A stretch of DNA of 63,008 bases, the filler included, from Octopus bimaculoides (Eukaryota): NCBI RefSeq assembly GCF_001194135.2. It is 6 parts of 6 records of this genome, joined end to end, with 100 filler letters (N's around TTAATTAATTAA, not from the genome) between each part and the next. Parts side by side here need not be neighbours in the genome. Positions count along the whole stretch, not along the records: positions 29,034 to 55,537 come from NC_068987.1; 5 more parts are not named here. One strand, given 5' to 3'. Positions 33,401-55,495 of the stretch are shown here, piece by piece; the stretch's first letter is position 1; every line of letters begins with the position of its first letter. Under the pieces are notes generated by a model. It was not told the DNA's origin. It saw nothing but the letters and a program-made list of their open reading frames with translations, and did no database searches. The position numbers and the translations under genes were made by a program.

Positions 33401-34642
33401 GTTATCAAAACTGAGAATTAAGAAAACGGTTCTTTTGACCAATTTTTAAGTATTTGAGGCTGAGATTTTATTCCATTGCTTCTACTAGTTTCCCAAAGCT
33501 TTGTTGTGAAAGACAAAAACTTGAAACTGAGTAACAACTGCAGAAAGCCTCTGCTTTGAATTATGAATAATAAACTCTTGTACTCTCTCTCATATATAAA
33601 TGAAATCCAAGCCTTGGAAGATTTTAAATCTAGTGTTGACAGTTTGCTGGTTGATTCACCACCATCCTCCTCATTTTAAGTAATAATTCATATCTCCTAA
33701 AGGTTGTCCGTTTGCCTGACACCTTTATCTGCCAACATATTTTAAATAATCCAGTACATTCAGAGTAAAAAAAAAAAAAAATCAATAACAAAAAAATCAA
33801 CATCTACCTATAAAATTCATTTTTGTAAATATTTGTTCACATTACCATCTAATATATAACTTTTTTTTTTTGGAATTGAAGATATGTCATTCTAGAAGTG
33901 TTATATATAAATTGTAAATACATAAATTCATATCATTCTGAATAAATTGAAATGAAAAAAAGAAAAACAAACCAAAAAATATATTGTTATATTTCTCTCT
34001 TTTTTTTTTTAAAATTAAATCATTAAAAAAAAATATATAAATTAAATTTATGTCTTTATACACATACATACACACACAACNNNNNNNNNNNNNNNNNNNN
34101 NNNNNNNNNNNNNNNNNNNNNNNNNNNNNNNNNNNNNNNNNNNNNNNNNNNNNNNNNNNNNNNNNNNNNNNNNNNNNNNNNNNNNNNNNNNNNNNNNNNN
34201 NNNNNNNNNNNNNNNNNNNNNNNNNNNNNNNNNNNNNNNNNNNNNNNNNNNNNNNNNNNNNNNNNNNNNNNNNNNNNNNNNNNNNNNNNNNNNNNNNNNN
34301 NNNNNNNNNNNNNNNNNNNNNNNNNNNNNNNNNNNNNNNNNNNNNNNNNNNNNNNNNNNNNNNNNNNNNNNNNNNNNNNNNNNNNNNNNNNNNNNNNNNN
34401 NAAAAACAGTAACGAAAATACCTTTTGAACTGTCAAGGTATCTCAAAGATTAGGCTTGCTCTGACCTAAAAAGCTCAAGTCAGAATCACATATCTGAGAA
34501 AAAAAATTGCTGTTACACACAAACATTCTAGAAAAAAAAATGTGGTAGTTAATCTCATTGGCTAAGATTCCCCCTCATCAACATGCTACAACCATTAACT
34601 CACAGATAAGGGTTTTTTTTCTTCTTTTCACCTTTTTTATAG

Positions 34643-35440: not shown

Positions 35441-35726
35441 TCAATACTGAAATGGAAAATCGAATAAAATATGTACAAACCATATTTTATTTAAAATCTT
35501 AACCAGGTGTTTTTCTGCCAAGATCTTACAATTAAGTTTGGAAGAGTTGTTTCCCTTGGACAACCTACCGTCCGGCAGCCGATTTCCTTGTTCAGCGAAA
35601 GTGTTTGTTTGCTCATTGACAGTGTTCACTCCCGCCCGCAGCAAGTATATTGCAAATGTGCAGTGAGCTTCCATAAGCAGATAAAATGCATCAATCATCA
35701 AATTGCTGGCACAGAAACTTAAAGTC
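35441..35726 (-). CDS. FANCF: FANCF-like coding exon 8 (terminal), TLSFCASNLMIDAFYLLMEAH...NTVNEQTNTFAEQG...FQY*
   Basis: Acceptor cacattcAG, phase 2 compatible with exon 7, open to TGA at 35441-43. Partial match to the recalled FANCF C-terminus (F..L..A; T...Q...F...G); weak polypyrimidine tract. Confidence 0.5.
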
Positions 35727-35776
35727 CTGAATGTGAATGTTCCATACATGTGTCATTTAATATATATATAAATATA

Positions 35777-36065
35777 TATATTACATACAAAAATAAGAGG
35801 AATGACCAGCAAAAGTGGACTCCTATATGCTAGAAATAGATGCCGAATCATCTAACCACGAAAAAAAAAATATGTTCTCAGTAAACATTTAGCGACACAA
35901 CAGACTGTAAAAGGGCAAGACAAATGAAAAAATACAGTCTGTTGTGTCGCTGAATTTTTACTGAGAACATATTTTTTTTTTCGTGGTTAGATGATTCGGC
36001 ATCTATTTCTAGCATATAGGAGTCCACTTTTGCTGGTCATTCCTCTTATTTTTGTATGTAATATA
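35777..36065. repeat. Near-perfect inverted repeat: 133-bp arms, 23-nt loop
   Basis: 35777-35909 versus 35933-36065, two mismatches seen. Confidence 0.92.
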
Positions 36066-36374
36066 ATCTTAATCTTCGGATTTTTTTAATATGCTAGATC
36101 ACTGGTTTTAATTGATTAATATCAATTTCTACCCTCATTAATAAATTTTATAAATGTATATATATATATATATATGAGAAGGGATGACCACTAAGTGGAG
36201 ATCCATTAAGCTAGAGATCGACCATCTACGGTGAAACCACAAAAGAAAAGAAAATGTACTCTAGGGAAATTTAGCGCACACCAGAACATGAACGAGCAAG
36301 ACAAATGGCACTTAGCAATGGCCACGACTACAATTTCACATTTATAAAATGTACAAAAACAAAACAAAACTTAC

Positions 36375-36533
36375 TGCCAAGTGTAGAGTGAATTGCGTTG
36401 GTCATGGTGGTGGTGGTAGAGAGGTGAAAATTGCTTTGCCCAGTCAATGAGTTGGCGTAAGCAGGTGGAAAACACCGGAAAAGATAGGAGTATCACTTGA
36501 GAGAGTAAATCTTCTGCTACAGACCATATTAAG
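36375..36533 (-). CDS. FANCF: FANCF-like exon 7, LIWSVAEDLLSQVILLSFPVFSTCLRQLIDWAKQFSPLYHHHHDQRNSLYTW
   Basis: Acceptor ctgttttctttgcAG, donor GTAAGT, 159 nt phase 2/2; aligns with the recalled LL..V....P.L...L..L.DW. Confidence 0.85.
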
Positions 36534-36736
36534 CTGCAAAGAAAACAGTAAATCTTCTAGATATTTCCCATCTCCTCATAGAACAGAGGCATCCATCAGT
36601 TTCAGTTTCTGTCTACCGAATCCCCTCACAAGGCTTTGGTCAGCCCAAGGCTATAGTAGAAGACACTTACCCAAACAATGAATAATTTAGTAAAATAACT
36701 TTGTTATTAAAGATGATGTGTGGAACATAAATGAAC

Positions 36737-37149
36737 GGCGCAGGAGTGGCTGTGTGGTAAGTAGCTTGCTTACCAACCACATGGTTCCGGGTTCATTCCC
36801 ACTGGGTGGCAACTTGGGCAAGTATCTTCTACTATAGCCTCGGGCTGACCAAAGCCTTGTGAGTGGATTTGGTAGACGGAAACTGAAAGAAGCCCGTCGT
36901 ATATATGTATATGCATATATATGTATGTGTGTGTATATGTTTGTGTGTCTGTGTTTGTCCCCCCAACATCGCTTGACAACCGATGCTGGTGTGTTTATGT
37001 CCCCGTAACTTAGCGGTTCGGCAAAAGAGACCGATAGAATAAGTACTAGGTATCCAAAGAATAAGTCCTGGGGTCGATTTGTTCGACTAAAGGTGGTGCT
37101 CCAGCATGGCCGCAGTCAAATGACTGAAACAAGTAAAAGAGTAAAAGAG
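36737..37149 (+). mobile_element. Full-length SINE family A with internal (TA/TG)n
   Basis: tRNA A/B-box head, central microsatellite, GGTGCTCCAGCATGGCCGCAG and (GTAAAAGA)n tail. Confidence 0.85.
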
Positions 37150-37256
37150 CTTGATGGAAGGTTCTGCTTTGGATCACTTTAAAAGAGTAAGTTTTTATGA
37201 AACAATGAAGATTGGTCTCAATGGTGAAGGTATCCAAAAAAATCTAAGGAACTAAC

Positions 37257-37399
37257 CTCGGAGGCTTGGACATCATGATATTGTTTTGGACAAATTGTTC
37301 AAGAAACTGATACACTTTTGAATACGAGTCTTTGGAAATGTTCCACAGTGTAGGATTAATGTCAACATCTTTTTTTGTTAGAAAATAAAGAAGAATTTC
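37257..37399 (-). CDS. FANCF: FANCF-like exon 6, EILLYFLTKKDVDINPTLWNISKDSYSKVYQFLEQFVQNNIMMSKPP
   Basis: Acceptor tttttattttgcAG, donor GTTAGT, 143 nt phase 0/2. Confidence 0.8.
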
Positions 37400-37427
37400 C
37401 TGCAAAATAAAAACACACATACATATA

Positions 37428-38040
37428 CAGGGTTGCAGTGAATAAACTGCCATCTAAATTATGCAGAAATGTAAATAACACTGACATCTCATTTTAACAG
37501 ATATATTTACTAAAATTACATAAAAATATCTTGAAATACTAAAGAGTACATTTATTTAATAAAATCGCCATTGGCTTCAACCATGGCCTCCAGACGACTT
37601 CTGAATCTCCTGCAACTCTTCTGGATGGTCTCCTTGTTTAAGTTGGTGAATGCTGCCATAATCCTTGCCTTCAGTTCATCTTTGGTGTTACAAGGAGTTT
37701 TGTTGGTCTCTCGCTCAACTGCACCCCACACATGATAATAAAGGGGGTTGCAGTGTTGGTAGTTTAGGGGTGATGTGGTCACAGAAATTGTCTCACAGTC
37801 ATGATTGGGTTTTCCTGCTTGTGTGGCATGGTGCAGAGTCCTGTTGCCAGACATATAGGGTCTTCCAGTAGCCACCCTCTTGACCCAGAGCAGCACTACC
37901 TCCTACAGGCACTTGATATAGGCCTCCGTGTTGAGTCTGTGGCTGTGTGGGAAGATGGAGGCATAATGTCGCCATCACTAGTGTTCACTCCAAACACCAT
38001 GATGTTGACTGGATGTTTTATTTTTGTCTCTCTTGATACA
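37428..38040 (-). mobile_element. Tc1/mariner (maT/DD37D-like) transposase 3' remnant with TIR
   Basis: KHPVNIMVFG...DG.IMPP...GLRLN; NPLYYHVWGAVERETN...LKARI...CRRFRSRLEAMVEANG; TA-CAGGG terminus at 37426-32. Confidence 0.8.
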
Positions 38041-38863
38041 TGTCCTCAGATTGACACTCAAACACTTTGAAATGCTTGTATTGGAGCTTGTGGCGCAAAT
38101 GCTAAGCAGTACAACATCATCATCATCATCATCGTTTAACGTCCGCTTTCCATGCTAGCATGGGTTGGACGATTTGACTGAGGACTGGTGAAACCGGATG
38201 GCTACACCAGGCTCCAATCTGATTTGACAGAGTTTCTACAGCTGGATGCCCTTCCTAACGCCAACCACTCTGAGAGTGTAGACATGTTATTTCCAAATTT
38301 CTGGCAGAGTGAATTGCATCATGGAGCAGCATACTTTGCTGGATGTGCAATGTCAGTGTGTATGTATGACAGATTATAAGTGTATTAAGAGAAAAATTGA
38401 GTATAAAAGGCATCAGATGTAGTGTGCAAGAGAGAAGACTACATTGGTATGGTCATGTGATGCATATGAATGAAGACAGTTGCACCAAGAGATGCTGATC
38501 TCTAATTGTGGAGGGAACATGTGGAAGAGGTAGACCCAGGAAGACATGGGATGAGGTGGTGAAATATGATCTTTGACTGTTGAGTCCCATGGAGGCAATG
38601 ACATGTGACCAAGACTTCTGGTGATCTGTTGTGCTTGAGAAGACGTGTCAAGGTAAGTGAAATCATGGTTGTGGCCAGTGCCAGTGATACACAAAAGACA
38701 CCCAGTACACTCTGTAGAGTGGTTGGTATTAAAAAGGGCATCCGGCCATAGAATCCAAGTCAAAACAGATGACTGGAACCAGGTGAGGCTTTCCAGCTTA
38801 GCAGCTTCGGTCAAACTGTCTAACCCATGCCAGCATGGGAAATGGACATTAAATGATGACATA

Positions 38864-38917
<54 letters not shown>

Positions 38918-39382
38918 AAATTCTGAACAGAAGTCATCGTACTATGTTGGGTACATCGTGGTATGTTGATTCTTGTTTATTTTTATGTATCTCGACCATA
39001 CGTGTACTGATGAACAAAAGATGCAGGTTACTTCACAGTTTTTCTGTATTTGATTGAGAAACCAGTGGTTTACCGTTAAGTTAAATGTTTTTAAGAGATT
39101 AATTTTGAAAGCTGCATTCCCTCGCTTTCGGTAAATATGTTGCTTATTTTTTGGTAGTTTTTGACTTATTTAGTTCCTCGAAGCGTGAGGCATTACTACA
39201 CTGTTAATGCCCTTTATATAAATTATATATATTTATGGAAAAAAAATGATGAATTTTTTTTTCATTATGAGGTTTTTTTCACGCCGACTACTTGATAAAT
39301 TCTTATAAAGATTTTATCCTATATTATATTATATATATATATATATGTATACATATGTGTGAAAATGCAAACAACGACTTAC

Positions 39383-39440
39383 CCAACCATCTTTAGAAGC
39401 AGGTAAATTGGAAATGATTTTTAATACCAACTGGTCCAAC
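39383..39440 (-). CDS. FANCF: FANCF-like exon 5, (R)LDQLVLKIISNLPASKDGW
   Basis: Acceptor ttatttctttgtataaAG, donor GTAAGT, 58 nt phase 2/0. Confidence 0.8.
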
Positions 39441-40683
39441 CTTTATACAAAGAAATAAGAGATATAAGATGTTAATATGTAACAGAAGGATACAATTTGA
39501 AAGGATATTTTGCTGCTATTTCTAGCATGTGGAATGACTGTATAGGGAGTCCCTCAATAGATATGTTATATATAAAGATGTAACAAATAGATGGGAATTA
39601 TGACTTGATGCAAAACTTGAAAATAGAAATTAACTCTCTCCCTTCACAAAGTAAATTAAGAGTCCCCTTTACTCATTGCTGACCATAGGCTTCTGCACCT
39701 GGAGAATTCCTCTTCAAGGTGCAAACCTTTGCAATCACCTGAATTCAGGTTTAGTTCCTATGTGCAGCACCATGAGTAAGAAAATTTCTTTTGTAACACC
39801 AGGCTGACCACTCATGGAATTTGTGAGTGGATTTATCAGACAGAAACTTAAAGAAACCTGTCCTAGTCCTGTGCTGGAAGAAGACCCACACTCCACAGCA
39901 GAAGCGTTAAAGCTGCATCCCCTGGTGAAGAGGATTGGCCTGCAAGAGTCCTGTGCTGGTGCCATGTTAAAAGCACCCAGCACACATTGTAAAGTCGATG
40001 GCATTAGGAAGGGCATCCAGCTGTATAAACTCGTGTGCAGACAAGTCATCGACAGACAATTCCCACATAGCCTCAGACTTAACACGGAGATTGTGGCTAC
40101 TGGGTCAAGAGGGTGGCTGCTGGAACATCCCATGTCTGGCCACAGGGCTCTGCACCATACCACACAATTGTCCTGTCTGTAAGTTGTCTGTCTACCATAG
40201 AAACCAAGCCAAATCAGACAGGAACCTGGTGCAGCTTTCTGTTTAGCCAGCTCTGGTCAAACTGTCCAGCCCATGCCAGCATAGAAATATGAAAAATGGA
40301 CATTAAAAGATGATGATGATGATGATGATATATATATATATATATCTTGCAAACAATATGCAGCTGCAAGTGCTACCAGTTGAAAGCTTTAGTTGACGCA
40401 TGGCTATAGAAAAAGAAACTTGCTCATGATGCCATGCAGTGGGATTGAACCGACAGCCACATGACTGGGAAGCAAACTTCTTAACCACACAGCCATGTGT
40501 GAAACTTTAGAGGATTGCTATGAAAGAAAGGAATAAACCAGAAGAAATTTAGCACAGTAAGTTTCATTCTTATTCAGACTTTCCAAACAGGAATGGAAAC
40601 TGGCCCCAAAACTTCTACTGATATGATCTGCTTACCTGATTTAAAAAAAAAAAAGAGGCAAGAATAACAATTTGATGACAAAC

Positions 40684-40880
40684 CTGTCTTCATCAGAAAT
40701 AATAGAGATTTGGTTGACAAGTCTCTGCCAGAGTATTTCACTTTTAACAATAGTAACTAATGACGAATGTGAGCCTGTTTTACTAGGTCGGCATTTGTCA
40801 TAACTGCAGTTTACAATGTCTCTTTCTAGTCTGGAAATTATTTGCAAGGAAGCATGGAGACTGTTGAGCTCAGCACATTG
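40684..40880 (-). CDS. FANCF: FANCF-like exon 4, QCAELNSLHASLQIISRLERDIVNCSY...VKSEILWQRLVNQISIISDED
   Basis: Acceptor ctctctcttttcAG, donor GTTTGT, 197 nt phase 0/2; KSEILWQRL resembles the recalled QAELLLERL. Confidence 0.85.
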
Positions 40881-40932
40881 CTGAAAAGAGAGAGAGAGAA
40901 AAGTATAGGTTGTCTAGTATATCTAGTGTGCT

Positions 40933-41270
40933 AATACCTCCGCCTTAGCAAAGGCAGAGGTATTGTTTTCAGTTGTGTTTGTTTGTTTGTCAGTGGACAA
41001 GATATCTCAAGAACCGCTGGATGGATTCGAATGAAACTTTCAGGGATGTTTGGCCTCGTGACTAGCACAAACTGATTAGATTTTGGGATTGATCCAGTAC
41101 CGGACAAGGATTCTGGATTATTTTTCAGTTTTTTTTACTTAATTTTTGAGAGCGGTGAGGTTCATTCTTAGTATTCTTGTCTGTGAGAGCAGTTGAATTT
41201 ATTTCAGATATTCTCATTTTAAAAATCATCTCTGGCTAATTATTAAACAGACGTTGGTGTTGCCTTGTTT
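40933..41270. mobile_element. Helentron-associated (HINE/DINE-like) non-autonomous fragment
   Basis: Hairpin AATACCTCCGCCT-TAGCAA-AGGCAGAGGTATT, then (GTTT)n and GATGGATT..ATGAAACTT, the pattern typical of these elements. Confidence 0.55.
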
Positions 41271-42658
41271 AGAATAATTTCAGCACAAACACATTGTAAT
41301 TGTTTTTAAAAAGTAGTTAATGGCAAATTGGTAAAACATCAGATGAAATACCTTGCTATTTGGTGACTTCATTTATGTGGAAGTGCATGGTCTAGTGGTT
41401 AGTACAAGGGTCTAGGGTGTTGGACTCATGATTGTAAGATTATGGTTTGATTCCTTGACTGAGCATATTGTTCCAGTCCTCTCAGCAGGCAAAAATGAGT
41501 AATTCTGCGACAGACTAGCATCCTGTGCAGGGGTGGAATTTATATGCCACAAAACTGGGAAACGGGGCGCTTATGAGTTGGCATGACCCTAGAAGGTAAC
41601 TTTTTTTTTACTGTCAATTACGGTCTGATTTCAAATCCCGCCCAGACTGATTTTACTTTACATCAGTGGCTCTCAACCATTTTCCACCTATGGATTCTTT
41701 GCTTCATATTTTATTCCATTGGATCCTTAGAACCATTTGATGTTTTAAAAAAAAAATTGTTAAAATATTTAGTGTATTGTAGAAGTATAAGAAATTTATT
41801 GTTCACAAATTTTAACACAAAATCTTATATGGATCCCTAAGGGTCATATGAACCCCGGTTGTGTGCTTTACACATCTCTAAAATAGATAAAACGTAGACA
41901 ATGTAGTTAGAGTTGGAAATAGTCTGGAAATAAGAAGGGATGGCCATGGCCAAGATGTGTTTGAGAATAGGTTAACCCTTTAGCATTCAGATTACTCTGT
42001 CACACATAATGCTCATTTATCCACATTGTTTTGTATTAATACGGCATTATGTTATAGCTCTGACATTCTGAGTTCAAATGCCGCTGAGGTCAACTTTACC
42101 TTTCATCCTTTTGGGGTCAATAAATTAAGTACTAGTTAATTACTGGAGCTGATGTAATTGACTATCCCCCTCCCACAAATTTCAGGCCTTGTGCCTATAA
42201 TAGAAAGTGTTATGTTGTAGCTCTAAGATTTTGACAATGTGATTGTTTTCTGAATGATATTGTAGGGAAGGTGTGAGAGGCTAGACTTGGCCAGTTTAAA
42301 CATAAAATAGGTAGAATATTTGGGCCAGATATGGCCGGTTTGAATGCTAAAGGGTCAACATGATTGCAGTAGAGCTGGTTCTACCCTTTCCCCTACTGTA
42401 GCTGATGTTTATGATGAGGGCAATAACACCTAAGTAATGATTTACAGGCTGGAACAGTAGATTATCAGGTCAAATGTATAACAGTATTTAGCTTTAACTC
42501 TCTATGTGTGTGTATGTGTGTGTGTGAGTGAGTTTGGAGGAGTCAAGTTCAAATTCCACTGAGGTCAACTCCTTTTGTTTTTCAGAGAAATTGAATGTAA
42601 ATGTCCATTTCTTGTTAGGTAAGCCAAACAATAATAAAAGTTACTGCAAAACTCTTAC

Positions 42659-42745
42659 TTTGATGATAATTTCCTTTTCTCCCAGGGACATTTGAATAAG
42701 TTCCTCAAATAATTCCTTTGGAAGATGACTATTACAGAACAGCAA
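42659..42745 (-). CDS. FANCF: FANCF-like exon 3, LLFCNSHLPKELFEELIQMSLGEKEIIIK
   Basis: Long polypyrimidine tract ttttctttattttcacattttAG, donor GTAAGA, 87 nt phase 0/0; gapless with the recalled RLLENRAL...HLVQ. Confidence 0.85.
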
Positions 42746-43381
42746 CTAAAATGTGAAAATAAAGAAAATAAGTGTAAGGCACTTCAGCATCATTGTTTTA
42801 ACATCCACCACTTTTCCATGCTTGCATGGGCTGGATGGAATTTGTTGAGGCAGGTTTTCTACAGTTGGATGCCTTTCCTGTCACCAACCTTAACCTGTTT
42901 CCATGTAAGGTAATATTTTCACATGACCAGACATGTTTCCACCGAAAATTGGAATTGAAACACTTTGCTTGCATGGTGACAATTGTTTACAACTATCATA
43001 TGATATGAAGGCAAGGACACAATAAAGCGTAAACACATACATACACTCCTCCTCCTTTAACATCTGTTTTCCATGCTGGCAATTTGACCAGGGCTGGAAA
43101 GCTGCACCAGGTTCCAGTCTGATTTGGCTTGGTTTCTATGGCTGGATGCCCTTCCTAAAGTCAACCACTTTACAGTGTGTATTGATTGCTTTTAACGTGT
43201 CATCAGCACGAATGCTTTTATTTGGCACTGGAATGTGTATTTTGTACATGGCACTGGAACAAGTGTTTTTTACATGGCACCAGCATTCTTGCAGGCCATT
43301 CTTCTTCACCAAGCGAGAATGTAGCCTTAACACTTCTGCTGTGGAGGACAGCTTTTCTATATATACATATATATATATCTA

Positions 43382-43648
43382 AACGAGGTATAAACAGTAG
43401 CTGCATGACAACGTGAAGTATATTTGCCACTTAAATGTGGCTAACCACTAAGGGTGGATGCTACTGAAGCTTGTAGCCCCAGGAGGACACCTCCTCCAGT
43501 TGGCTATTGACACACTTTCTGTGCCCTATCAGGTCAAAGATGGGAAGGATGGTTTCCCTTTGCAAATACTGATAGGGCACAGAAAACGTGTCAATAGCCA
43601 ACTGGAGGAGGTTTCCTCCTGGGGCTACAAACTTCAGTAGCATCCACA
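43382..43648. mobile_element. Second copy of the 914-1329 fold-back element with the central ribozyme loop deleted
   Basis: Matches the reverse complement of 1329-914 except for a ~130-bp internal deletion. Confidence 0.8.
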
Positions 43649-44473
43649 AGCCTCGTGTGTGTGTGTGGGTGGGGTGGGATGGCAACGTTATGTGAGGAGA
43701 ATAAAGAGTAGAGAGGGATAAGATATGAGAAAAAAAAAGGGGCTGCAGCAAAATAAGTTTCTTGCTGTAGATGGTGGAAGAGGTGGAGATGGAATGTGGT
43801 GGGTGACATTTAGTCTACACCAGAGCACTATGTATCATTATTTGGGTAAATGAAATTGTTGACGGAGATTCAGAAATATTCCTGACAGCTAAGGCTGGCC
43901 TATCTTACGGATAATAATTGACCAGACAAAAGCTTAACGTTAGTTTCTCTGCAACTGCAGAGTTCATGATAATCTCTGAATCCATAGATAATCAAAAGAC
44001 AAAGTTATCACACATTGCCAACTCTTTCACTAATCTCTTCTTTCTCCAGTGTTTTCTGTCATAATCCTCCATTCTCCCTTACACACCATCTCTCATCCAT
44101 CCACCAAGGATCATCACTCATACTTTCTTGTAAACCCCGGTAACAACACAGAAATATATCAACTAGCCTCCAAAAAATGTGTGAGAAAGAGTCTCTTTAT
44201 AGCTATTTGACTAGCATGAAATAGCAATCAATTCTTGAAATCACATCACACCATTTTAAAAAGGAAGGACACATTAGCCAATGAAGTCATCGATATAGAA
44301 AAAGGGAGCGCATTCACATCTTTGATCACATGTCTGCTTGACCAGGGCTGATCTGGAATGAAACATTACTGCCGTCGCTGCCACCGCCACCACCACCACC
44401 ACCACTGCTATCACCACCACCACCACCACTGCTATCATCACCACCACCACCACCACTGCTTTAACATACTAAC

Positions 44474-44617
44474 TTGTCTTAAATTGTCAGTGGCTTTGTC
44501 CAGAAACTGAAGGTTAAGGTCTCCACATATCAAAGGGGATGATTGCACTGCATTCAGCTTTATGATTTGTTGGTTGAATACTTCCTTATAAGGTTTTTTA
44601 ATCACTTGTTTATAGAT
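44474..44617 (-). CDS. FANCF: FANCF-like exon 2, IYKQVIKKPYKEVFNQQIIKLNAVQSSPLICGDLNLQFLDKATDNLRQ
   Basis: Acceptor cttgatatatttcAG, donor GTTAGT, 144 nt phase 0/0. Confidence 0.85.
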
Positions 44618-44689
44618 CTGAAATATATCAAGAATGAAATTTAGCATAAAGTGTGTATGTATGTATATATTTCATCTTGAAGTGGTGCA

Positions 44690-45390
44690 TGGTACCAGAA
44701 TTTTCTGACTTGATCGGAGCATGAGCAAGTGGGATGGTAGGGCCAGATCAGAACATTATGTATGCTCAGAATGGCCACCTTGGGAAACTATGATGCCTGG
44801 ATGCCATAATGTAAATCATGAGACACTAATTAAGAAGAAGATCATTTTGCTATCACTGTATATAAAACTAGGCCTGATGAAGCAATTTACCAAAGCACTG
44901 CAACATAACAAGCCATGTTTCTAGTACCTCAAGGCGATCTTCCCTAAAATAAGTGATGCCAAGATTAAAGAGGGCATATTCGTAGGCCCTCAGATTTGTC
45001 AAGTAATAGCTGATGAGGACTTCGAGGTGACAATGGATGAAACTGAGCTAGCAGCCTGGCATGCATTCAAAGATGTATGCAAAGGACTTCTGGGAAAGCA
45101 CCAAATGGCCCAGCGTGAGAGTATAGTGGAGAGCCTAATCAAGTGCAACCAAAATCTCAGATGCAATATGTCACTGAAGATACACTTTCTTCATTCTCAT
45201 CTGTCCTTCTTCTCAGAGGATGCAGGAGATGTGAGTGATGGAACTTGGAGAGAGGTTCCATCATGATATAGTATCAATGGAAAACAGGTATAAGGGAAAA
45301 ATGGAGCTGTGCTGGCTGACTTCTGCTGGCATCTGAAGCGTGACACACCTGAGACGTCTTATAAACAAAGAAGTATATACTAAAATGTAG
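44690..45390 (+). mobile_element. Decayed CMC/Chapaev3-like DNA transposase (C-terminal half)
   Basis: WD.RAR..HY...WP; L.IKLGLMKQF.KAL; AKIKEGIFVGP; CNMSLKIHFLHSHL; stops and frameshifts. Superfamily label is from memory. Confidence 0.7.
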
Positions 45391-47176
45391 GTTCATACTT
45401 TATATAATGCTAACAAACATGCTGATNNNNNNNNNNNNNNNNNNNNNNNNNNNNNNNNNNNNNNNNNNNNNNNNNNNNNNNNNNNNNNNNNNNNNNNNNN
45501 NNNNNNNNNNNNNNNNNNNNNNNNNNNNNNNNNNNNNNNNNNNNNNNNNNNNNNNNNNNNNNNNNNNNNNNNNNNNNNNNNNNNNNNNNNNNNNNNNNNN
45601 NNNNNNNNNNNNNNNNNNNNNNNNNNNNNNNNNNNNNNNNNNNNNNNNNNNNNNNNNNNNNNNNNNNNNNNNNNNNNNNNNNNNNNNNNNNNNNNNNNNN
45701 NNNNNNNNNNNNNNNNNNNNNNNNNNNNNNNNNNNNNNNNNNNNNNNNNNNNNNNNNNNNNNNNNNNNNNNNNNNNNNNNNNNNNNNNNNNNNNNNNNNN
45801 NNNNNNNNNNNNNNNNNNNNNNNNNNNNNNNNNNNNNNNNNNNNNNNNNNNNNNNNNNNNNNNNNNNNNNNNNNNNNNNNNNNNNNNNNNNNNNNNNNNN
45901 NNNNNNNNNNNNNNNNNNNNNNNNNNNNNNNNNNNNNNNNNNNNNNNNNNNNNNNNNNNNNNNNNNNNNNNNNNNNNNNNNNNNNNNNNNNNNNNNNNNN
46001 NNNNNNNNNNNNNNNNNNNNNNNNNNNNNNNNNNNNNNNNNNNNNNNNNNNNNNNNNNNNNNNNNNNNNNNNNNNNNNNNNNNNNNNNNNNNNNNNNNNN
46101 NNNNNNNNNNNNNNNNNNNNNNNNNNNNNNNNNNNNNNNNNNNNNNNNNNNNNNNNNNNNNNNNNNNNNNNNNNNNNNNNNNNNNNNNNNNNNNNNNNNN
46201 NNNNNNNNNNNNNNNNNNNNNNNNNNNNNNNNNNNNNNNNNNNNNNNNNNNNNNNNNNNNNNNNNNNNNNNNNNNNNNNNNNNNNNNNNNNNNNNNNNNN
46301 NNNNNNNNNNNNNNNNNNNNNNNNNNNNNNNNNNNNNNNNNNNNNNNNNNNNNNNATCACAATATTTTTCAAAATTCCAAGTTACATTTTCTAGATATAT
46401 GTGAGTGAGATCATTGCCAGTACCGCTGGACTGACTCCTGTGCAGGTGGCACGTAAAATACACCATTTCGAGCGTGGCTGTTGCCAGTACTGCCTGACTG
46501 GCCTTCGTGCCGAGTGGCACATAAAAGCACCCACTACACTCTCGGAGTGGTTGGCGTTAGGAAGGGCATCTAGCTGTAGAAACATTGCGAGATCAGATTG
46601 GAGCCTGGTGTAGCCATCTGGTTCACCAGTCCTCACTCAAATCGTCCAACCCATGCTAGCATGGAAAGCGGACGTTAAACGATGATGATGATGATGATGT
46701 GGTACATGTCAATATGAGTGTTCACCCAGCATGATAGGGATTCTGCCAGCTTACCACTTTTAACTCTGAGGCAAAAATGTTAATAAGCATATACTGATAC
46801 ATTAAAAAGAAAACCTGTGCTCCACAGCAGAAGTGTTAAGACCAATCCCTGTGTTGGTGTAAAACACTTGTGGCAGTGCAATGTAAAAGTGCCTATGTGG
46901 TGTCACATAAAGGCACCTGTGTGGTGCCATGTAGAAGTGCATTTGCAGTGCCACGTTGAAAGCACCGAGGCCACTCTGTAAAGTGGTTGGCATTAGGAAG
47001 GACACCCAGCTGTAGAAACCATACCAAATCAGACTGGAATCTGGTGCAGCTTTGGTGAAACCATCCACCTCATGCCAGCATGGACAATGGATGTTAAATG
47101 AAGATGATGATTAACAGAGTAACAAAAAAAAAAAAGCGGGGAGTTTTATATTGAAATAGAGCCCCTTGTGCATTAC

Positions 47177-47305
47177 CTCTTTGCAATAAGCTGCCCAGTG
47201 GAGAGCATTTTGTAAAGAATTCTTGTCCCAAGTTGCTACTTCTTCTGTGCTAGCTTGCTGTAAGATTTTGGTGAAGAAATATATGTTTTTCAAAAATGTA
47301 GACAT
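47177..47305 (-). CDS. FANCF: FANCF-like exon 1 (ATG), MSTFLKNIYFFTKILQQASTEEVATWDKNSLQNALHWAAYCKE
   Basis: Acceptor ttttttcAG at 47315-14, ATG 47305-03, donor GTAATG. Gapless, about 15/43 identical to the recalled human FANCF N-terminus (ST..V.TWD......AL.WA.Y). Confidence 0.88.
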
Positions 47306-48365
47306 AATTGAATCTGAAAAAAACCCCCCAAAAAAACAAAACAGAATTTACACACATTATGCCATCATTGTTGTCATTTGTTCTCAGTCATCAGTCATCA
47401 GTCATCAGTGAAAACATGTCCGTGGAAACAGATGATAGTTGATGACAAAAAGGGCTATAGAAAATTTGCCTCAACTAATTCCATCTAACTCATGCAAGCA
47501 TGGAAAAGGGGATGTTAAAATGACAACGACGATGATGACAATGGAGCAGAAACAACATCTTCACTACTGAAGTAAATATTAATGTAAAGTCATGTGGAGA
47601 CAAACAACAACAAAACACACACATATGATGAACTCTAATACAATGGATTTCAGTCACAAGGCGTTAGTCAACCTTAGGTTACAGTAGGAAACTGTTGTTC
47701 AAGGTAGTTACATAGTAGAATCAAATCTGAAACTAGGTGGTTGTGAAGTGGACTACTTAACCAGAGTCATACATGAATCTAGATGAACTCATAAAGATAG
47801 ACGACAGAGAACAGACAGAGAAATATGCTTGCACTGTTGCACCATGTGTAGGACTTAATGCATTGCCCAGTTTAACTTTACCACTTTCGGTGCCTTAAGT
47901 GGAGCCTACTTTTGTAAGCATGAAGCAGGGCTGTCTCAGCAGTTTTATAGGCTCAGGACAAATCAATGCATTGGGCCCTGTACTCGTGAGGTCTCTGGGT
48001 AACTGTCCACTGTGCCAATACCTTAAGGTAGCACTAGGATCAGGTCTGAGGATATCTTATTGCTATATTTCAAGATGGTCATTTTTTCCTCTTGCCAAAT
48101 AAACGCCACGCACTATATATTCGTTCTGCACTCGTTTATTATTGTTATTATTCTATCCTATGCCCATTGTCTGGAAATCTTTCGTCACACATCTGTGACC
48201 TCTAGAGTGACTCTTCCATCCACGTTTTCCTGTTCTGTTTAGTCCATTCTGTCTAAACGCATGCATTTGTGTCTCTGTGTGTGTACGTGTGTCTGTGTTT
48301 TGTATGCGCGTATATGGGTTTGCTTACTATATTATTTGTATCCGTGCTCTTCATATAAGTTTTTT

Positions 48366-52652: not shown

Positions 52653-52849
52653 CTTCCCTACAGTGTTAAGCACTTTCGGTATGCAAATTAGGGACTCCTT
52701 CATAGAGTAACTGCTGCATTTGTTGAGTATATAAACAGTTTGGCTGCTTGTTCTTGATCGAGTTCTTGATGAAGATCTGTGATAACTTGATCCTTGATCT
52801 TGTGACAACTTCCTCTCTGTTTTCACTTTACACCAATGAAGTACAGACA

Positions 52850-53850
52850 ACTGATTCAACACTGCAGTAAACTACCACACATGTACGGTCTCCCTAAGGG
52901 TCACAAGGATGGTATTCCATTAAGACCTATAGTGAGCTGTAGAGGTTCAGCATGTCATCCACTGAGCCGCTGCCTTGTGGATATAATCAGTCCATTAGCA
53001 GGAAAGTCAACATCGTACGTGAAGAATTCCACCCACTTCACAGAATTGATCAAGGATACCCCCATTGAATCCAACCAGATGGTGAATCTAGATTTGATAA
53101 GTCTGTTCACCAAAGTCCCAACTACTGAAGCACTATCGGTGATTCAAGAAAAACTAGTGACAGACACCCATCTAAAAAACGCACTAGTATACCAACAAAA
53201 AATTTGATGGAAATGTTGACCTTTTGTGTAGAAACTACCTATTTCAGTATGGACACTGATATATATCGACAAGAAGAGGGCTTAGATATGGGTTCGCCAT
53301 TATCATCGATAATAGCCAATATATACATGGAGTACTTAGAGAATTTGACTTTAGGATCAACACCACTAAAATCAACCCTATGGCTGCGATATGTTGATGA
53401 CATCTTTATTCTCTAGCTCCATCAGGAAGATGTCCAAGTGCTGTTAGCTCATGTGAACTCAATAAAGCCATCCATACAGTTCACAATGGAAAAGGAAAAA
53501 GGCAATCAGCTAGCATTCCTGGACGTATTAATAACACGCACCAATTATGGATTCCCGACATCCGTATACCGCAAGCCGACCTTCACTGGACGATACCTTA
53601 ACTTCAATTCCCACCAGCCATACGGCGTAAAGAGAGGAATTGCTCAGTGCCTAAAAAATCGAGCAAAGAATATAAGTAGCGCTCGTGATACCCATCACGA
53701 AGAAATGATCAAGCTCAGTAACAATCTGTTAAGCAACAACTACTCCAAAAGTATACTATCCACTCCAATTATGAAGAAAAGAGAGAGTGAAACCAATAAA
53801 CTGTCTACAGTCTGTCTACCCTATGTGAAAAGCCTCTCCGAAAACATTTC
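52850..53850 (+). mobile_element. Penelope-like element reverse transcriptase, disabled
   Basis: P.MYGLPK.HKDGIPLRPIVS, DLISLFTKVP, GLDMGSPLS..IANIYME, WLRYVDD, QFTMEKE...LAFLD, VYRKPT...YLNF.S.QP; several stops. Confidence 0.92.
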
Positions 53851-55495
53851 GTTATATGTCTGTATGTATGTACGTATGTATGTATGTATGTATGTATGTA
53901 TGTATGTATGTATGTATGTANNNNNNNNNNNNNNNNNNNNNNNNNNNNNNNNNNNNNNNNNNNNNNNNNNNNNNNNNNNNNNNNNNNNNNNNNNNNNNNN
54001 NNNNNNNNNNNNNNNNNNNNNNNNNNNNNNNNNNNNNNNNNNNNNNNNNNNNNNNNNNNNNTATATATATATATTTATATATATATATATATACACACGA
54101 CGGGCAACTTTCAGTTTATGTCCACTAAATCCACCTATAAGGATTTGGTATGCCTGGGGTTATAGTAGAAAACTCTTGCCCAAGGTGCCAATCTGTGAGA
54201 CTGAACCTGAAACCGTATGGTTGAGAAACGAACTTAAAACAAAATTATATCTATTCACAACGCTTTTTTTTCCTAGGGAAGGATACAGTTGATTATATTG
54301 ACTTAAGAATGATAAATACATTTGATTTCAGTGGATGTGAACTGTATATAACAAAGCACAGGAGGAAAAATGTATCATCTTTATGCAAAAAACAACTTTA
54401 TGCAAAAAACAACTTTATGCAAAAAACAAAAAAATACAAACAAACCAGTATTTGCTTTTACAATTTCGGTTGCAGTTCTGTGAAGTATTAAATGTCAAGT
54501 CCATTCCTATTAATTTTGCAATAATACATGGCGACCACCGTCCTCTTACATCATGCCTCGGAGACAGACCACATCACGACGACATTTTCAGACATCTGCT
54601 TATGATGTAGATTACGTTTTAGGTATTAATCCCACATAATCTACCTTGGTTATTACAGTGAGGTTGCTTTATCTCATTCTATATGCCTTCTGTGCCATCA
54701 GGTATTTTGTCATTTTCTATTCTCGGATAGCAAAAACACACGCCTCAACATGAGAGCTAAAATGTCGTCATGTTCAAAATAGACTACTCTGGTTGTTTGC
54801 ATTAGTGTCACGCTGAATGAAGCTTACTTACAAAATATCTATGCACAATCTTCTGCTAATAAGCAGAAGGCTTTCTTCGTATGTTCTGTTGCTCTAGAAG
54901 CGTGCAACTCCCCAGGGCGTGTATCCTCGGTTATCATCCGTCTCTCATATTGCTATTTAATTCATGTATACAGATTTTTTTTCCCTGGATGAACTTCGAC
55001 ACTTGATGGTTAGTTAATGCTGACGAAAAGATATGATGCGACAAGCAAAGGCTGTTTGAATCACTTTTAAACCTCTTCCACCATATTTTCGGTTTGAGGA
55101 AACATACTATCTATGTAGAAATTTATGGGAGTTTTTCAATAGTTTACAGGTTTTAATATCAACTGTTCGTATCTCATCTAGCGTCCAATCGACAGCCTAA
55201 GTATTGACAAGAGTACTGGAACAGTAAAAAAATTGCAGGAGAGTTCTGAAAGCCATATTATCCTTCATCTGGTTGTTATATTCTCTTGTTTTGCGTTCCA
55301 GGTTACAAGTATTTGTCATAAAAATGTCTTTCATGAATCACTAGGTATTTGTAGCATTCCCCTTGAGATATCGAAGAAATAGGTAGTGGCTAGAGATGTA
55401 TGTATGTATGTATGTATGTATGTATGCATGCATGTATGTATGCATGTATGTATGTAAGTTTGTCTGTAAATATACGCGTGTATCCTTATATGAAA

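What the first reader, a model, noticed from the sequence alone, without database searches (positions are those of the whole stretch)
35441..47313. Intron-rich FANCF homolog in a mollusc-type genome (8 coding exons, 400 aa)
Seen: eight minus-strand exons with canonical splice sites and compatible phases (129+144+87+197+58+143+159+286 = 1203 nt). The N-terminal 43 aa align without gaps to recalled human FANCF, and further motifs recur in the right order (N.Q.L...L...L..N, E.L..RL, LL..V...L.DW). Established: human FANCF is a single-exon gene, and Drosophila and C. elegans lack a recognisable FANCF. Inference: a spliced FANCF is ancestral, the intronless vertebrate form arose by intron loss or retroposition, and this lineage may keep an FA core complex. 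Such divergent exons are easily missed by annotation.
Basis: partly seen in the sequence, partly recalled or inferred. Interest (0 to 1): 0.75.

Follow-up and report, generated by a model that had tools for sequence, protein, structure and literature searches.

The report
Octopus FANCF gene, last exon mis-called
This is the already-annotated Octopus bimaculoides copy of the DNA-repair gene FANCF, split into eight coding exons whose intron positions are shared with snails, oysters, a worm, a scorpion and amphioxus.

Summary
The window piece is Octopus bimaculoides chromosome CM046607.1, and the gene is RefSeq LOC106871123.

- **Exons 1-7 are real.** They are the RefSeq model. Each is hit separately and in order by the O. 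sinensis and Argonauta orthologues. They score 69.9 bits on Pfam FANCF (cut-off 24) and evolve at dN/dS 0.29.
- **Exon 8 (35726-35441) is not real.** Orthologues end with a different 62-aa exon that completes the FANCF profile. The true exon 8 falls in the assembly gap 34081-34401, whose flanks are colinear with O. sinensis.
- **The flagged gap 45427-46355 is harmless.** It lies inside intron 1, and no orthologue or human residues are missing between exons 1 and 2.
- **An ancestral spliced FANCF is supported.** All seven octopus introns share position and phase with Lottia, a chiton and amphioxus. Six or seven are shared with oyster, six with a scorpion and five with an annelid. Fish and human FANCF are single-exon.

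The gene was not missed by annotation. It is an ordinary, already catalogued gene. The intron result is a modest evolutionary note.

The parts
47177..47313 (-). First coding exon. ATG at 47305-47303, 129 coding nt (aa 1-43), preceded by 8 nt of 5'UTR after an AG acceptor at 47315-47314. Donor GTAATG.
   Evidence: Gap-free alignment to the human FANCF N-terminus. Argonauta has an annotated intron 8 nt upstream of its ATG.
45427..46355 (.). Assembly gap (929 N) inside intron 1. No coding sequence is affected.
   Evidence: Orthologue and human proteins are continuous across the exon 1/2 junction. O. sinensis intron 1 is 839 bp, and the sequences abutting the gap have no match in the O. sinensis locus.
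44474..44617 (-). Coding exon 2, 144 nt, phase 0/0.
   Evidence: Same intron columns in eight species.
42659..42745 (-). Coding exon 3, 87 nt.
40684..40880 (-). Coding exon 4, 197 nt, ends in phase 2.
39383..39440 (-). Coding exon 5, 58 nt. The same 58-nt length occurs in Argonauta, O. sinensis, chiton, oyster, scorpion and amphioxus.
37257..37399 (-). Coding exon 6, 143 nt.
36375..36533 (-). Coding exon 7, 159 nt, ends in phase 2 (..TGG CA|gtaagt). The 306-aa RefSeq X1 product is exons 1-7 read on into this intron (TGG CAg taa).
35441..35726 (-). Rejected: it is an open frame inside intron 7, not coding sequence.
   Evidence: No FANCF or other Pfam hit. No orthologue match. The O. sinensis counterpart has a 4-nt deletion, a 1-nt insertion and two in-frame stops. 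Its 92% nucleotide identity is like the neighbouring intron, at 90%.
34081..34401 (-). Assembly gap (321 N) that should contain the true terminal coding exon (about 187 nt plus stop, about 62 aa, ending in the ...SIWHDLL... region).
   Evidence: Window 34684-34402 aligns to O. sinensis up to 13 nt before its exon 8 acceptor, and window 34042-32702 resumes about 700 bp after its stop. O. sinensis exon 8 supplies Pfam FANCF profile positions ~276-345.

Best explanation
The locus is the Octopus bimaculoides orthologue of FANCF (RefSeq LOC106871123). It is a functional, selectively constrained gene on the minus strand with eight coding exons. Seven of them are present in the window (47305 down to 36375). 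The eighth is hidden in the 321-N assembly gap at 34081-34401.

By homology, the protein would be the all-helical adaptor subunit of the Fanconi anaemia core complex. In that complex the FANCC-FANCE-FANCF module recognises the substrate, FANCF bridges FANCC and FANCE and binds FANCM, and the FANCL/UBE2T ligase monoubiquitinates FANCD2-FANCI during interstrand-crosslink repair. In plants the same module also limits meiotic crossovers.

Shown here: gene structure, family membership, purifying selection and deep conservation of intron positions. Inferred only: the biochemical role in octopus.

The seven-intron layout predates the protostome-deuterostome split. The single-exon vertebrate gene is therefore derived.
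For: Identity of the DNA: locus L001 from GCA_001194135.2 CM046607.1 has the same gene span and the same N-gap lengths in the same order.

Family membership:
- The full-length O. sinensis orthologue covers the profile 1-345 of 346 at 82.8 bits.
- An invertebrate-only profile hits human FANCF 7kzp_F at E 7.4e-24 over 343 positions and 2iqc at 4.3e-12, with no other PDB hit.
- The AlphaFold model (pLDDT 77.7) has top Foldseek hits 7kzp_F at 2.5e-6 and 9a0j_F at 9.4e-4.

Exons: each of exons 1-7 is hit separately by two orthologues, and the hits stop at or within a few codons of the predicted splice sites.

Selection: dN/dS is 0.29 against O. sinensis. Exons are 96% identical and introns about 90-92%.

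Last exon: the flanks of gap 34081-34401 are colinear with the sequence around O. sinensis exon 8.

Intron conservation: exact spliced mapping of annotated proteins gives phases 0,0,0,2,0,2,2 at identical alignment columns in octopus, Argonauta, Lottia, chiton and Branchiostoma. Six or seven of seven are shared with oyster (two sit 7-8 columns away in variable regions), six with Centruroides and five with Owenia.

Function of the family: PMC10085685.
Against: - No transcript evidence could be consulted, so the splice junctions rest on comparative and annotation evidence. The RefSeq models in other species may themselves be partly predicted.
- The terminal exon of O. bimaculoides is not seen at all, so a lineage-specific loss cannot be formally excluded.
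- The O. sinensis interval matching the gap is about 900 bp, against 321 N plus 38 nt in the window. Gap lengths are only estimates.
- The presence of partner subunits in octopus was not tested.
- The cephalopod-only profile found no PDB hit at E <= 0.01. The link to human FANCF needs Pfam or the broader invertebrate profile.
Confidence: 0.93

Rival explanations
1. One reading: exon 7 splices to 35726-35441, giving a 400-aa FANCF with a lineage-specific C-terminus.
For: The segment is open in the right phase, is bounded by an AG acceptor and ends in a stop. Without RNA data, its use as a minor alternative exon cannot be excluded.
Against: - The 94-aa peptide has no Pfam hit, and the FANCF match stops at residue 288.
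- O. sinensis and Argonauta use a different terminal exon that completes the profile.
- The orthologous O. sinensis stretch carries frameshifting indels and two stops, and is no more conserved than intron.
- The sequence before the AG is not pyrimidine-rich.
Confidence: 0.03
2. O. bimaculoides FANCF is truncated or decaying. The C-terminal exon is really deleted, and the gene ends after exon 7, as in the 306-aa RefSeq product.
For: The RefSeq isoform X1 stops right after exon 7. Exon 8 is not visible anywhere in the piece.
Against: - The missing interval coincides exactly with an N gap whose two flanks are colinear with O. sinensis.
- Exons 1-7 are intact with dN/dS 0.29.
- The 306-aa product is what results from reading on past the exon 7 donor into a TAA.
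- The C-terminal domain is conserved in all 17 aligned orthologues.
Confidence: 0.03
3. The protein is an unrelated helical-repeat protein that resembles FANCF only superficially.
For: Helical-repeat folds attract many weak structural matches (ranks 3-50). Identity to human FANCF is only about 18-20%.
Against: The sequence-profile evidence is specific and full-length. FANCF chains are the only structural hits at E <= 1e-3. The cephalopod-only profile retrieves proteins that their sources name FANCF in Biomphalaria, Elysia and Coregonus.
Confidence: 0.01

Closest known systems
Human FANCF (PDB 7KZP chain F, 2IQC; Pfam PF11107)
   Same: Homology covers the full length, with a conserved N-terminal WD...ALxWAxY block and a C-terminal ...SIW.DLL block. 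Both are all-helical two-domain folds of similar length (about 367 vs 374 aa).
   Different: The octopus gene is split by seven coding-region introns over more than 13 kb, whereas the human and zebrafish genes are single-exon. Identity is only about 20%. The middle region (residues ~115-158) is poorly conserved and has low confidence in the model.
Octopus sinensis LOC115214310 and Argonauta hians orthologue
   Same: Exon lengths are the same for exons 1-6 (129,144,87,197,58,143). Protein identity is 93% and 61%, and the intron phases match.
   Different: Exon 7 has one extra His codon in O. bimaculoides (159 vs 156 nt). Intron 1 is about 1.7 kb longer in O. bimaculoides. The O. bimaculoides terminal exon is unsequenced.
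FANCF of other invertebrates (Lottia, Liolophura, Crassostrea, Owenia, Centruroides, Branchiostoma)
   Same: They share the same intron positions and phases, and most have the eight-exon layout.
   Different: Owenia has fused exons 3-5 and Centruroides has fused exons 6-7. Branchiostoma has one extra intron, in phase 1, inside the equivalent of exon 4.
Arabidopsis FANCF (AT5G44010), part of the conserved FANCC-E-F module (PMC10085685)
   Same: It shows that the family is far older than animals, so a molluscan FANCF is expected.
   Different: It was not compared here. The plant role described is to limit meiotic crossovers.

Membership tests
FANCF (Pfam PF11107 / IPR035428) | The sequence scores above the curated Pfam gathering threshold. 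| tested here: met
FANCF (Pfam PF11107 / IPR035428) | Full-length match that includes the C-terminal helical-repeat domain. | tested here: inconclusive
   The window sequence covers profile positions 1-276 of 346 only, because the terminal exon lies in gap 34081-34401. The O. sinensis orthologue covers 1-345 of 346.
FANCF (Pfam PF11107 / IPR035428) | Specific reciprocal relationship to experimentally defined human FANCF. | tested here: met
   The invertebrate-only profile hits only 7kzp_F (7.4e-24) and 2iqc (4.3e-12) in the whole PDB sequence set. The single sequence hits 7kzp_F at E 0.009.
FANCF (Pfam PF11107 / IPR035428) | Fold similar to the solved FANCF structures. | tested here: met
   Tested on the O. 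sinensis orthologue, not the window protein. 7kzp_F scores E 2.5e-6 (TM 0.47/0.50), 9a0j_F scores 9.4e-4 (target-normalised TM 0.64), and 2iqc has probability 1.00.
FANCF (Pfam PF11107 / IPR035428) | Physical interaction with FANCC/FANCE, FANCA/FANCG and the FANCM MM1 motif, and a requirement for FANCD2 monoubiquitination. | not testable with these tools
   Needs biochemistry or genetics.
FA core complex present in the lineage | Genes for FANCA, B, C, E, G, L, M and FAAP100 are found in the octopus genome. | not tested
The literature reports co-distribution of FANCC, E and F across animals (PMC10085685).
Vertebrate FANCF as an intron-less derivative (retrocopy or wholesale intron loss) | Outgroups share homologous introns, and vertebrates have none. 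| tested here: met
   Seven shared intron positions run from molluscs to amphioxus. The Coregonus locus is one continuous ORF. Zebrafish and human genes are single-exon (PMC6328202, PMC4657327).
Vertebrate FANCF as an intron-less derivative (retrocopy or wholesale intron loss) | Hallmarks of retroposition: a changed genomic neighbourhood, poly-A or target-site-duplication remnants, and the timing in early vertebrates. | not tested
   No synteny analysis was done, and no lamprey, shark or tunicate loci were examined.

The most novel reading that the evidence does not exclude
The seven-intron, eight-exon architecture of FANCF was already present in the last common ancestor of bilaterians. The single-exon FANCF of jawed vertebrates arose by one event that removed all introns at once, after the split from amphioxus. 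That event would be either a retrocopy replacing the parental gene or recombination with a reverse-transcribed mRNA. I found no paper stating this in the searched library.
Probability: 0.6. Interest if true: 0.3.

Novelty: already known. Interest (0 to 1): 0.22.

Why it matters
For the genome itself, the result is a correction. Closing the gap would give a full-length protein of about 367 aa.

Biologically, a FANCF in a cephalopod is expected. [quoted passage not shown]

The one mildly interesting point is the column-for-column conservation of seven introns from molluscs to amphioxus. This makes the intron-less vertebrate FANCF a clear case of wholesale intron loss. It also offers a dated window (after amphioxus, before bony fishes) in which to look for the event.

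Tried and rejected
Tested by tblastn with orthologues, by Pfam and by alignment to O. sinensis. Rejected.
- **True exon 8 elsewhere in the piece.** Searched by sensitive tblastn (word size 2, E 10). Not found.
- **Second database search with a 41-sequence alignment.** It was swamped by teleost FANCF and returned no invertebrates.
- **Third database search with invertebrates only.** It returned five proteins, adding only a Lytechinus fragment without a contig.
- **Contig look-ups.** They nevertheless accepted proteins from the representative search. The Lineus protein was not on record.
- **Spliced mapper on the Coregonus model.** It failed because that annotation skips 39 codons of an (AAASATT)n repeat. 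The genomic locus is a single uninterrupted ORF.
- **Cephalopod-only profile against the PDB.** Nothing at E <= 0.01. The broader invertebrate profile was needed.
- **Literature searches.** 'FANCF' with 'intronless' or 'retrogene' found nothing. A search combining FANCF with mollusc, amphioxus or Nematostella terms listed no FANCF paper among its 15 top-ranked results.
- **Pfam scan of transposon-looking ORFs in the introns and upstream.** Only one reverse-transcriptase fragment scored.
Full report
**Provenance.** The piece (29034-55537, 37% G+C, eight internal N gaps) is Octopus bimaculoides chromosome CM046607.1 of assembly GCA_001194135.2. The contig that encodes the RefSeq protein LOC106871123 has the same gene span (10,935 bp) and the same series of gap lengths in the same order.

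**The observation.** This recovers one coherent chain on the minus strand: 47305-47177, 44617-44474, 42745-42659, 40880-40684, 39440-39383, 37399-37257, 36533-36375 and 35726-35441. Joined, these give 1203 nt and a 400-aa open frame. All seven introns begin with GT and end with AG, and most acceptors follow pyrimidine-rich tracts. The finding's upper boundary, 47313, is the first base after an AG acceptor 8 nt upstream of the ATG. Argonauta hians has an annotated 5'UTR intron at the same distance.

**Is it FANCF?** Yes.
The match covers residues 1-288 and profile positions 1-276 of 346.
- A profile built only from invertebrate sequences (cephalopods, other molluscs, an annelid, a nemertean, a scorpion and amphioxus) hits human FANCF over 343 positions at E 7.4e-24. 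It also hits the crystallised C-terminal domain 2iqc at 4.3e-12, and nothing else in the PDB.
- An AlphaFold2 model of the full-length O. sinensis orthologue is all-helical except for one short hairpin (mean pLDDT 77.7). Its only Foldseek matches at E <= 1e-3 are FANCF chains of the human core complex (7kzp_F, 2.5e-6) and of entry 9a0j (9.4e-4). 2iqc also has probability 1.00.

**Exons 1-7 are real; exon 8 is not.** The database search returned three cephalopod proteins:
- O. bimaculoides LOC106871123 isoform X1, 306 aa, 100% identical over 77% of the query. UniRef gives it a name that begins 'Fanconi anemia gr' (cut off in the output).
- O. sinensis LOC115214310, 367 aa.
- A partial Argonauta hians protein, 388 aa.

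The 306-aa RefSeq product is exons 1-7 followed by read-through of the exon 7 donor (TGG CAg taa). With tblastn, the O. sinensis and Argonauta proteins hit each of exons 1-7 separately and in order, and the matches end at or within a few codons of the predicted splice sites.

Both orthologues then continue with a different C-terminus (LQEKDSNEISTFADLSKHFMILTNCGEQPKKAVQAALESLQNQTSCSIWHDLLTKISTKDHI in O. sinensis). This has no match anywhere in the piece. With it, O. sinensis covers the Pfam profile 1-345 of 346 at 82.8 bits.

Its 92% nucleotide identity is no higher than that of the adjacent intron, at 90%.

**Where the real exon 8 is.**
- Window 34684-34402 aligns to O. sinensis up to 13 nt before the acceptor of its exon 8 (L002 22669-22855).
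- The N run 34401-34081 starts at exactly that point.
- Window 34042-32702 resumes colinearly at L002 23554.

The terminal exon therefore lies in the unsequenced interval. The O. sinensis interval is about 900 bp, against 321 N plus 38 nt in the window. That is compatible, because gap lengths are only estimates.

**The flagged gap 45427-46355.** This gap is in intron 1. Nothing coding is missing. The orthologue proteins and human FANCF run straight from ...AAYCKE to IYKQ..., and the Pfam alignment is continuous there. O. sinensis intron 1 is only 839 bp, whereas the window has 2559 positions including the gap. The two species align for about 430 bp at the 5' end and about 100 bp at the 3' end of the intron. 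The 37-39-nt sequences abutting the gap have no match in the O. sinensis locus at up to 3 mismatches. The gap therefore appears to lie in intron sequence that O. sinensis lacks.

**Is the gene alive?** Over 304 aligned codons of exons 1-7, O. bimaculoides and O. sinensis differ at 36 nucleotides and 19 residues. This gives dS 0.094, dN 0.027 and dN/dS 0.29, which indicates purifying selection.

**Is it new?** No.
- A full HMMER scan of 1.84 billion representative proteins with a cephalopod-only profile found 91 relatives at E <= 1e-3.
- The named molluscan ones are from Gigantopelta, Patella, Solemya, Lottia, Liolophura, Crassostrea, Dreissena, Biomphalaria, Mytilus, Potamilus, Mya, Plakobranchus and Elysia.
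- Named relatives outside molluscs are from Owenia (annelid), Lineus (nemertean), Centruroides (scorpion), Branchiostoma and Coregonus.
- The Biomphalaria entries are labelled 'fanconi anemia group F protein' and the Elysia entry 'fanconi anemia group F protein-like'.
- A Lytechinus fragment turned up.
[quoted passage not shown] It is present in Hymenoptera and was not detected in Diptera or Lepidoptera (PMC10085685).

**The evolutionary inference.** I wrote an exact spliced mapper and placed annotated proteins on their own loci. Coding exon lengths are:

| Species | Coding exon lengths (nt) |
|---|---|
| O. sinensis | 129, 144, 87, 197, 58, 143, 156, 187 |
| Lottia | 135, 141, 96, 167, 55, 125, 153, 190 |
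| Liolophura (chiton) | 135, 141, 96, 176, 58, 104, 153, 190 |
| Crassostrea virginica | 135, 141, 93, 161, 58, 113, 153, 196 |
| Owenia | 135, 141, 351, 128, 147, 184 |
| Centruroides | 132, 132, 84, 146, 58, 278, 178 |
| Branchiostoma | 129, 147, 96, 97, 97, 58, 134, 144, 214 |

I projected the intron positions onto a 17-sequence alignment. The seven octopus introns have phases 0,0,0,2,0,2,2.
- They fall in the same columns as those of Argonauta, Lottia, the chiton and amphioxus. Amphioxus has one extra intron.
- In the oyster all seven have matching phases, but two sit 7-8 columns away, in poorly aligned regions.
- Six are shared with the scorpion (one of them 7 columns off) and five with the annelid.

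The Coregonus locus is one continuous ORF. Its annotated 'intron' is a skipped 39-codon repeat. Zebrafish fancf is a single-exon gene (PMC6328202), and human FANCF has a single coding exon (PMC4657327).

The spliced form is therefore ancestral for bilaterians. All introns were lost between the amphioxus split and the ancestor of bony vertebrates. Whether that happened by retroposition or by in-place loss was not tested.

**Mechanism.** This is inferred from homology and was not tested here. FANCF bridges FANCC and FANCE in the substrate-recognition module of the FA core complex and binds FANCM. The complex's FANCL ligase, with UBE2T, monoubiquitinates FANCD2-FANCI (PMC10085685, PMC4657327). 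Whether the other subunits exist in octopus was not examined.

**Verdict.** This is a correctly spotted FANCF gene that is already catalogued. The eighth is an intronic open frame that stands in for an exon hidden by an assembly gap. Overall interest is low. The intron conservation is a tidy but modest evolutionary observation.

Noticed in passing
window 52836-54292 (+): Three consecutive same-strand ORFs upstream of FANCF. The middle one (53204-53416) matches reverse transcriptase RVT_1 (E 1e-6, 29.0 bits, just under the 29.6 cut-off) and has a YVDD-like motif. This looks like a decayed retroelement, interrupted by the N gap 53921-54061.
   Followed up: partly
window 38114-38281, 39968-40327, 43101-43215, 46381-46700, 46959-47111: Copies and fragments of one short interspersed repeat, 70-94% identical, lie in both orientations inside FANCF introns 1, 2, 4 and 5. 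In translation it reads ...LQLDALPNANHSESV.... An orthologous stretch is also present in O. sinensis intron 1.
   Followed up: partly
window 37552-37896 (-), in intron 5: A 114-aa ORF ending ...KDELKARIMAAFTNLNKETIQKSCRRFRSRLEAMVEANGDFIK. From memory it resembles the C-terminus of a mariner/Tc1-type transposase. Pfam gave no hit, so this is unverified.
   Followed up: partly
window 44650-45426 (intron 1, next to the gap), incl. ORF 45027-45266 (+): Roughly 800 bp of intron 1 that has no counterpart in O. sinensis intron 1 and contains a 79-aa ORF on the opposite strand with no Pfam hit. It may be part of a lineage-specific insertion that also contains the 929-N gap.
   Followed up: partly
L008 (Coregonus clupeaformis FANCF locus), about 1140-1260: The RefSeq fish model removes 39 codons of an in-frame (AAASATT)n repeat as an 'intron'. 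The genome reads through as one ORF of 402 codons, so that intron may be an annotation artefact or a repeat-length difference.
   Followed up: no
window 36375-36533 vs L002 18692-18847: Exon 7 has a run of four His codons in O. bimaculoides and three in O. sinensis. This in-frame 3-nt length difference is the only indel in the seven shared exons.
   Followed up: yes
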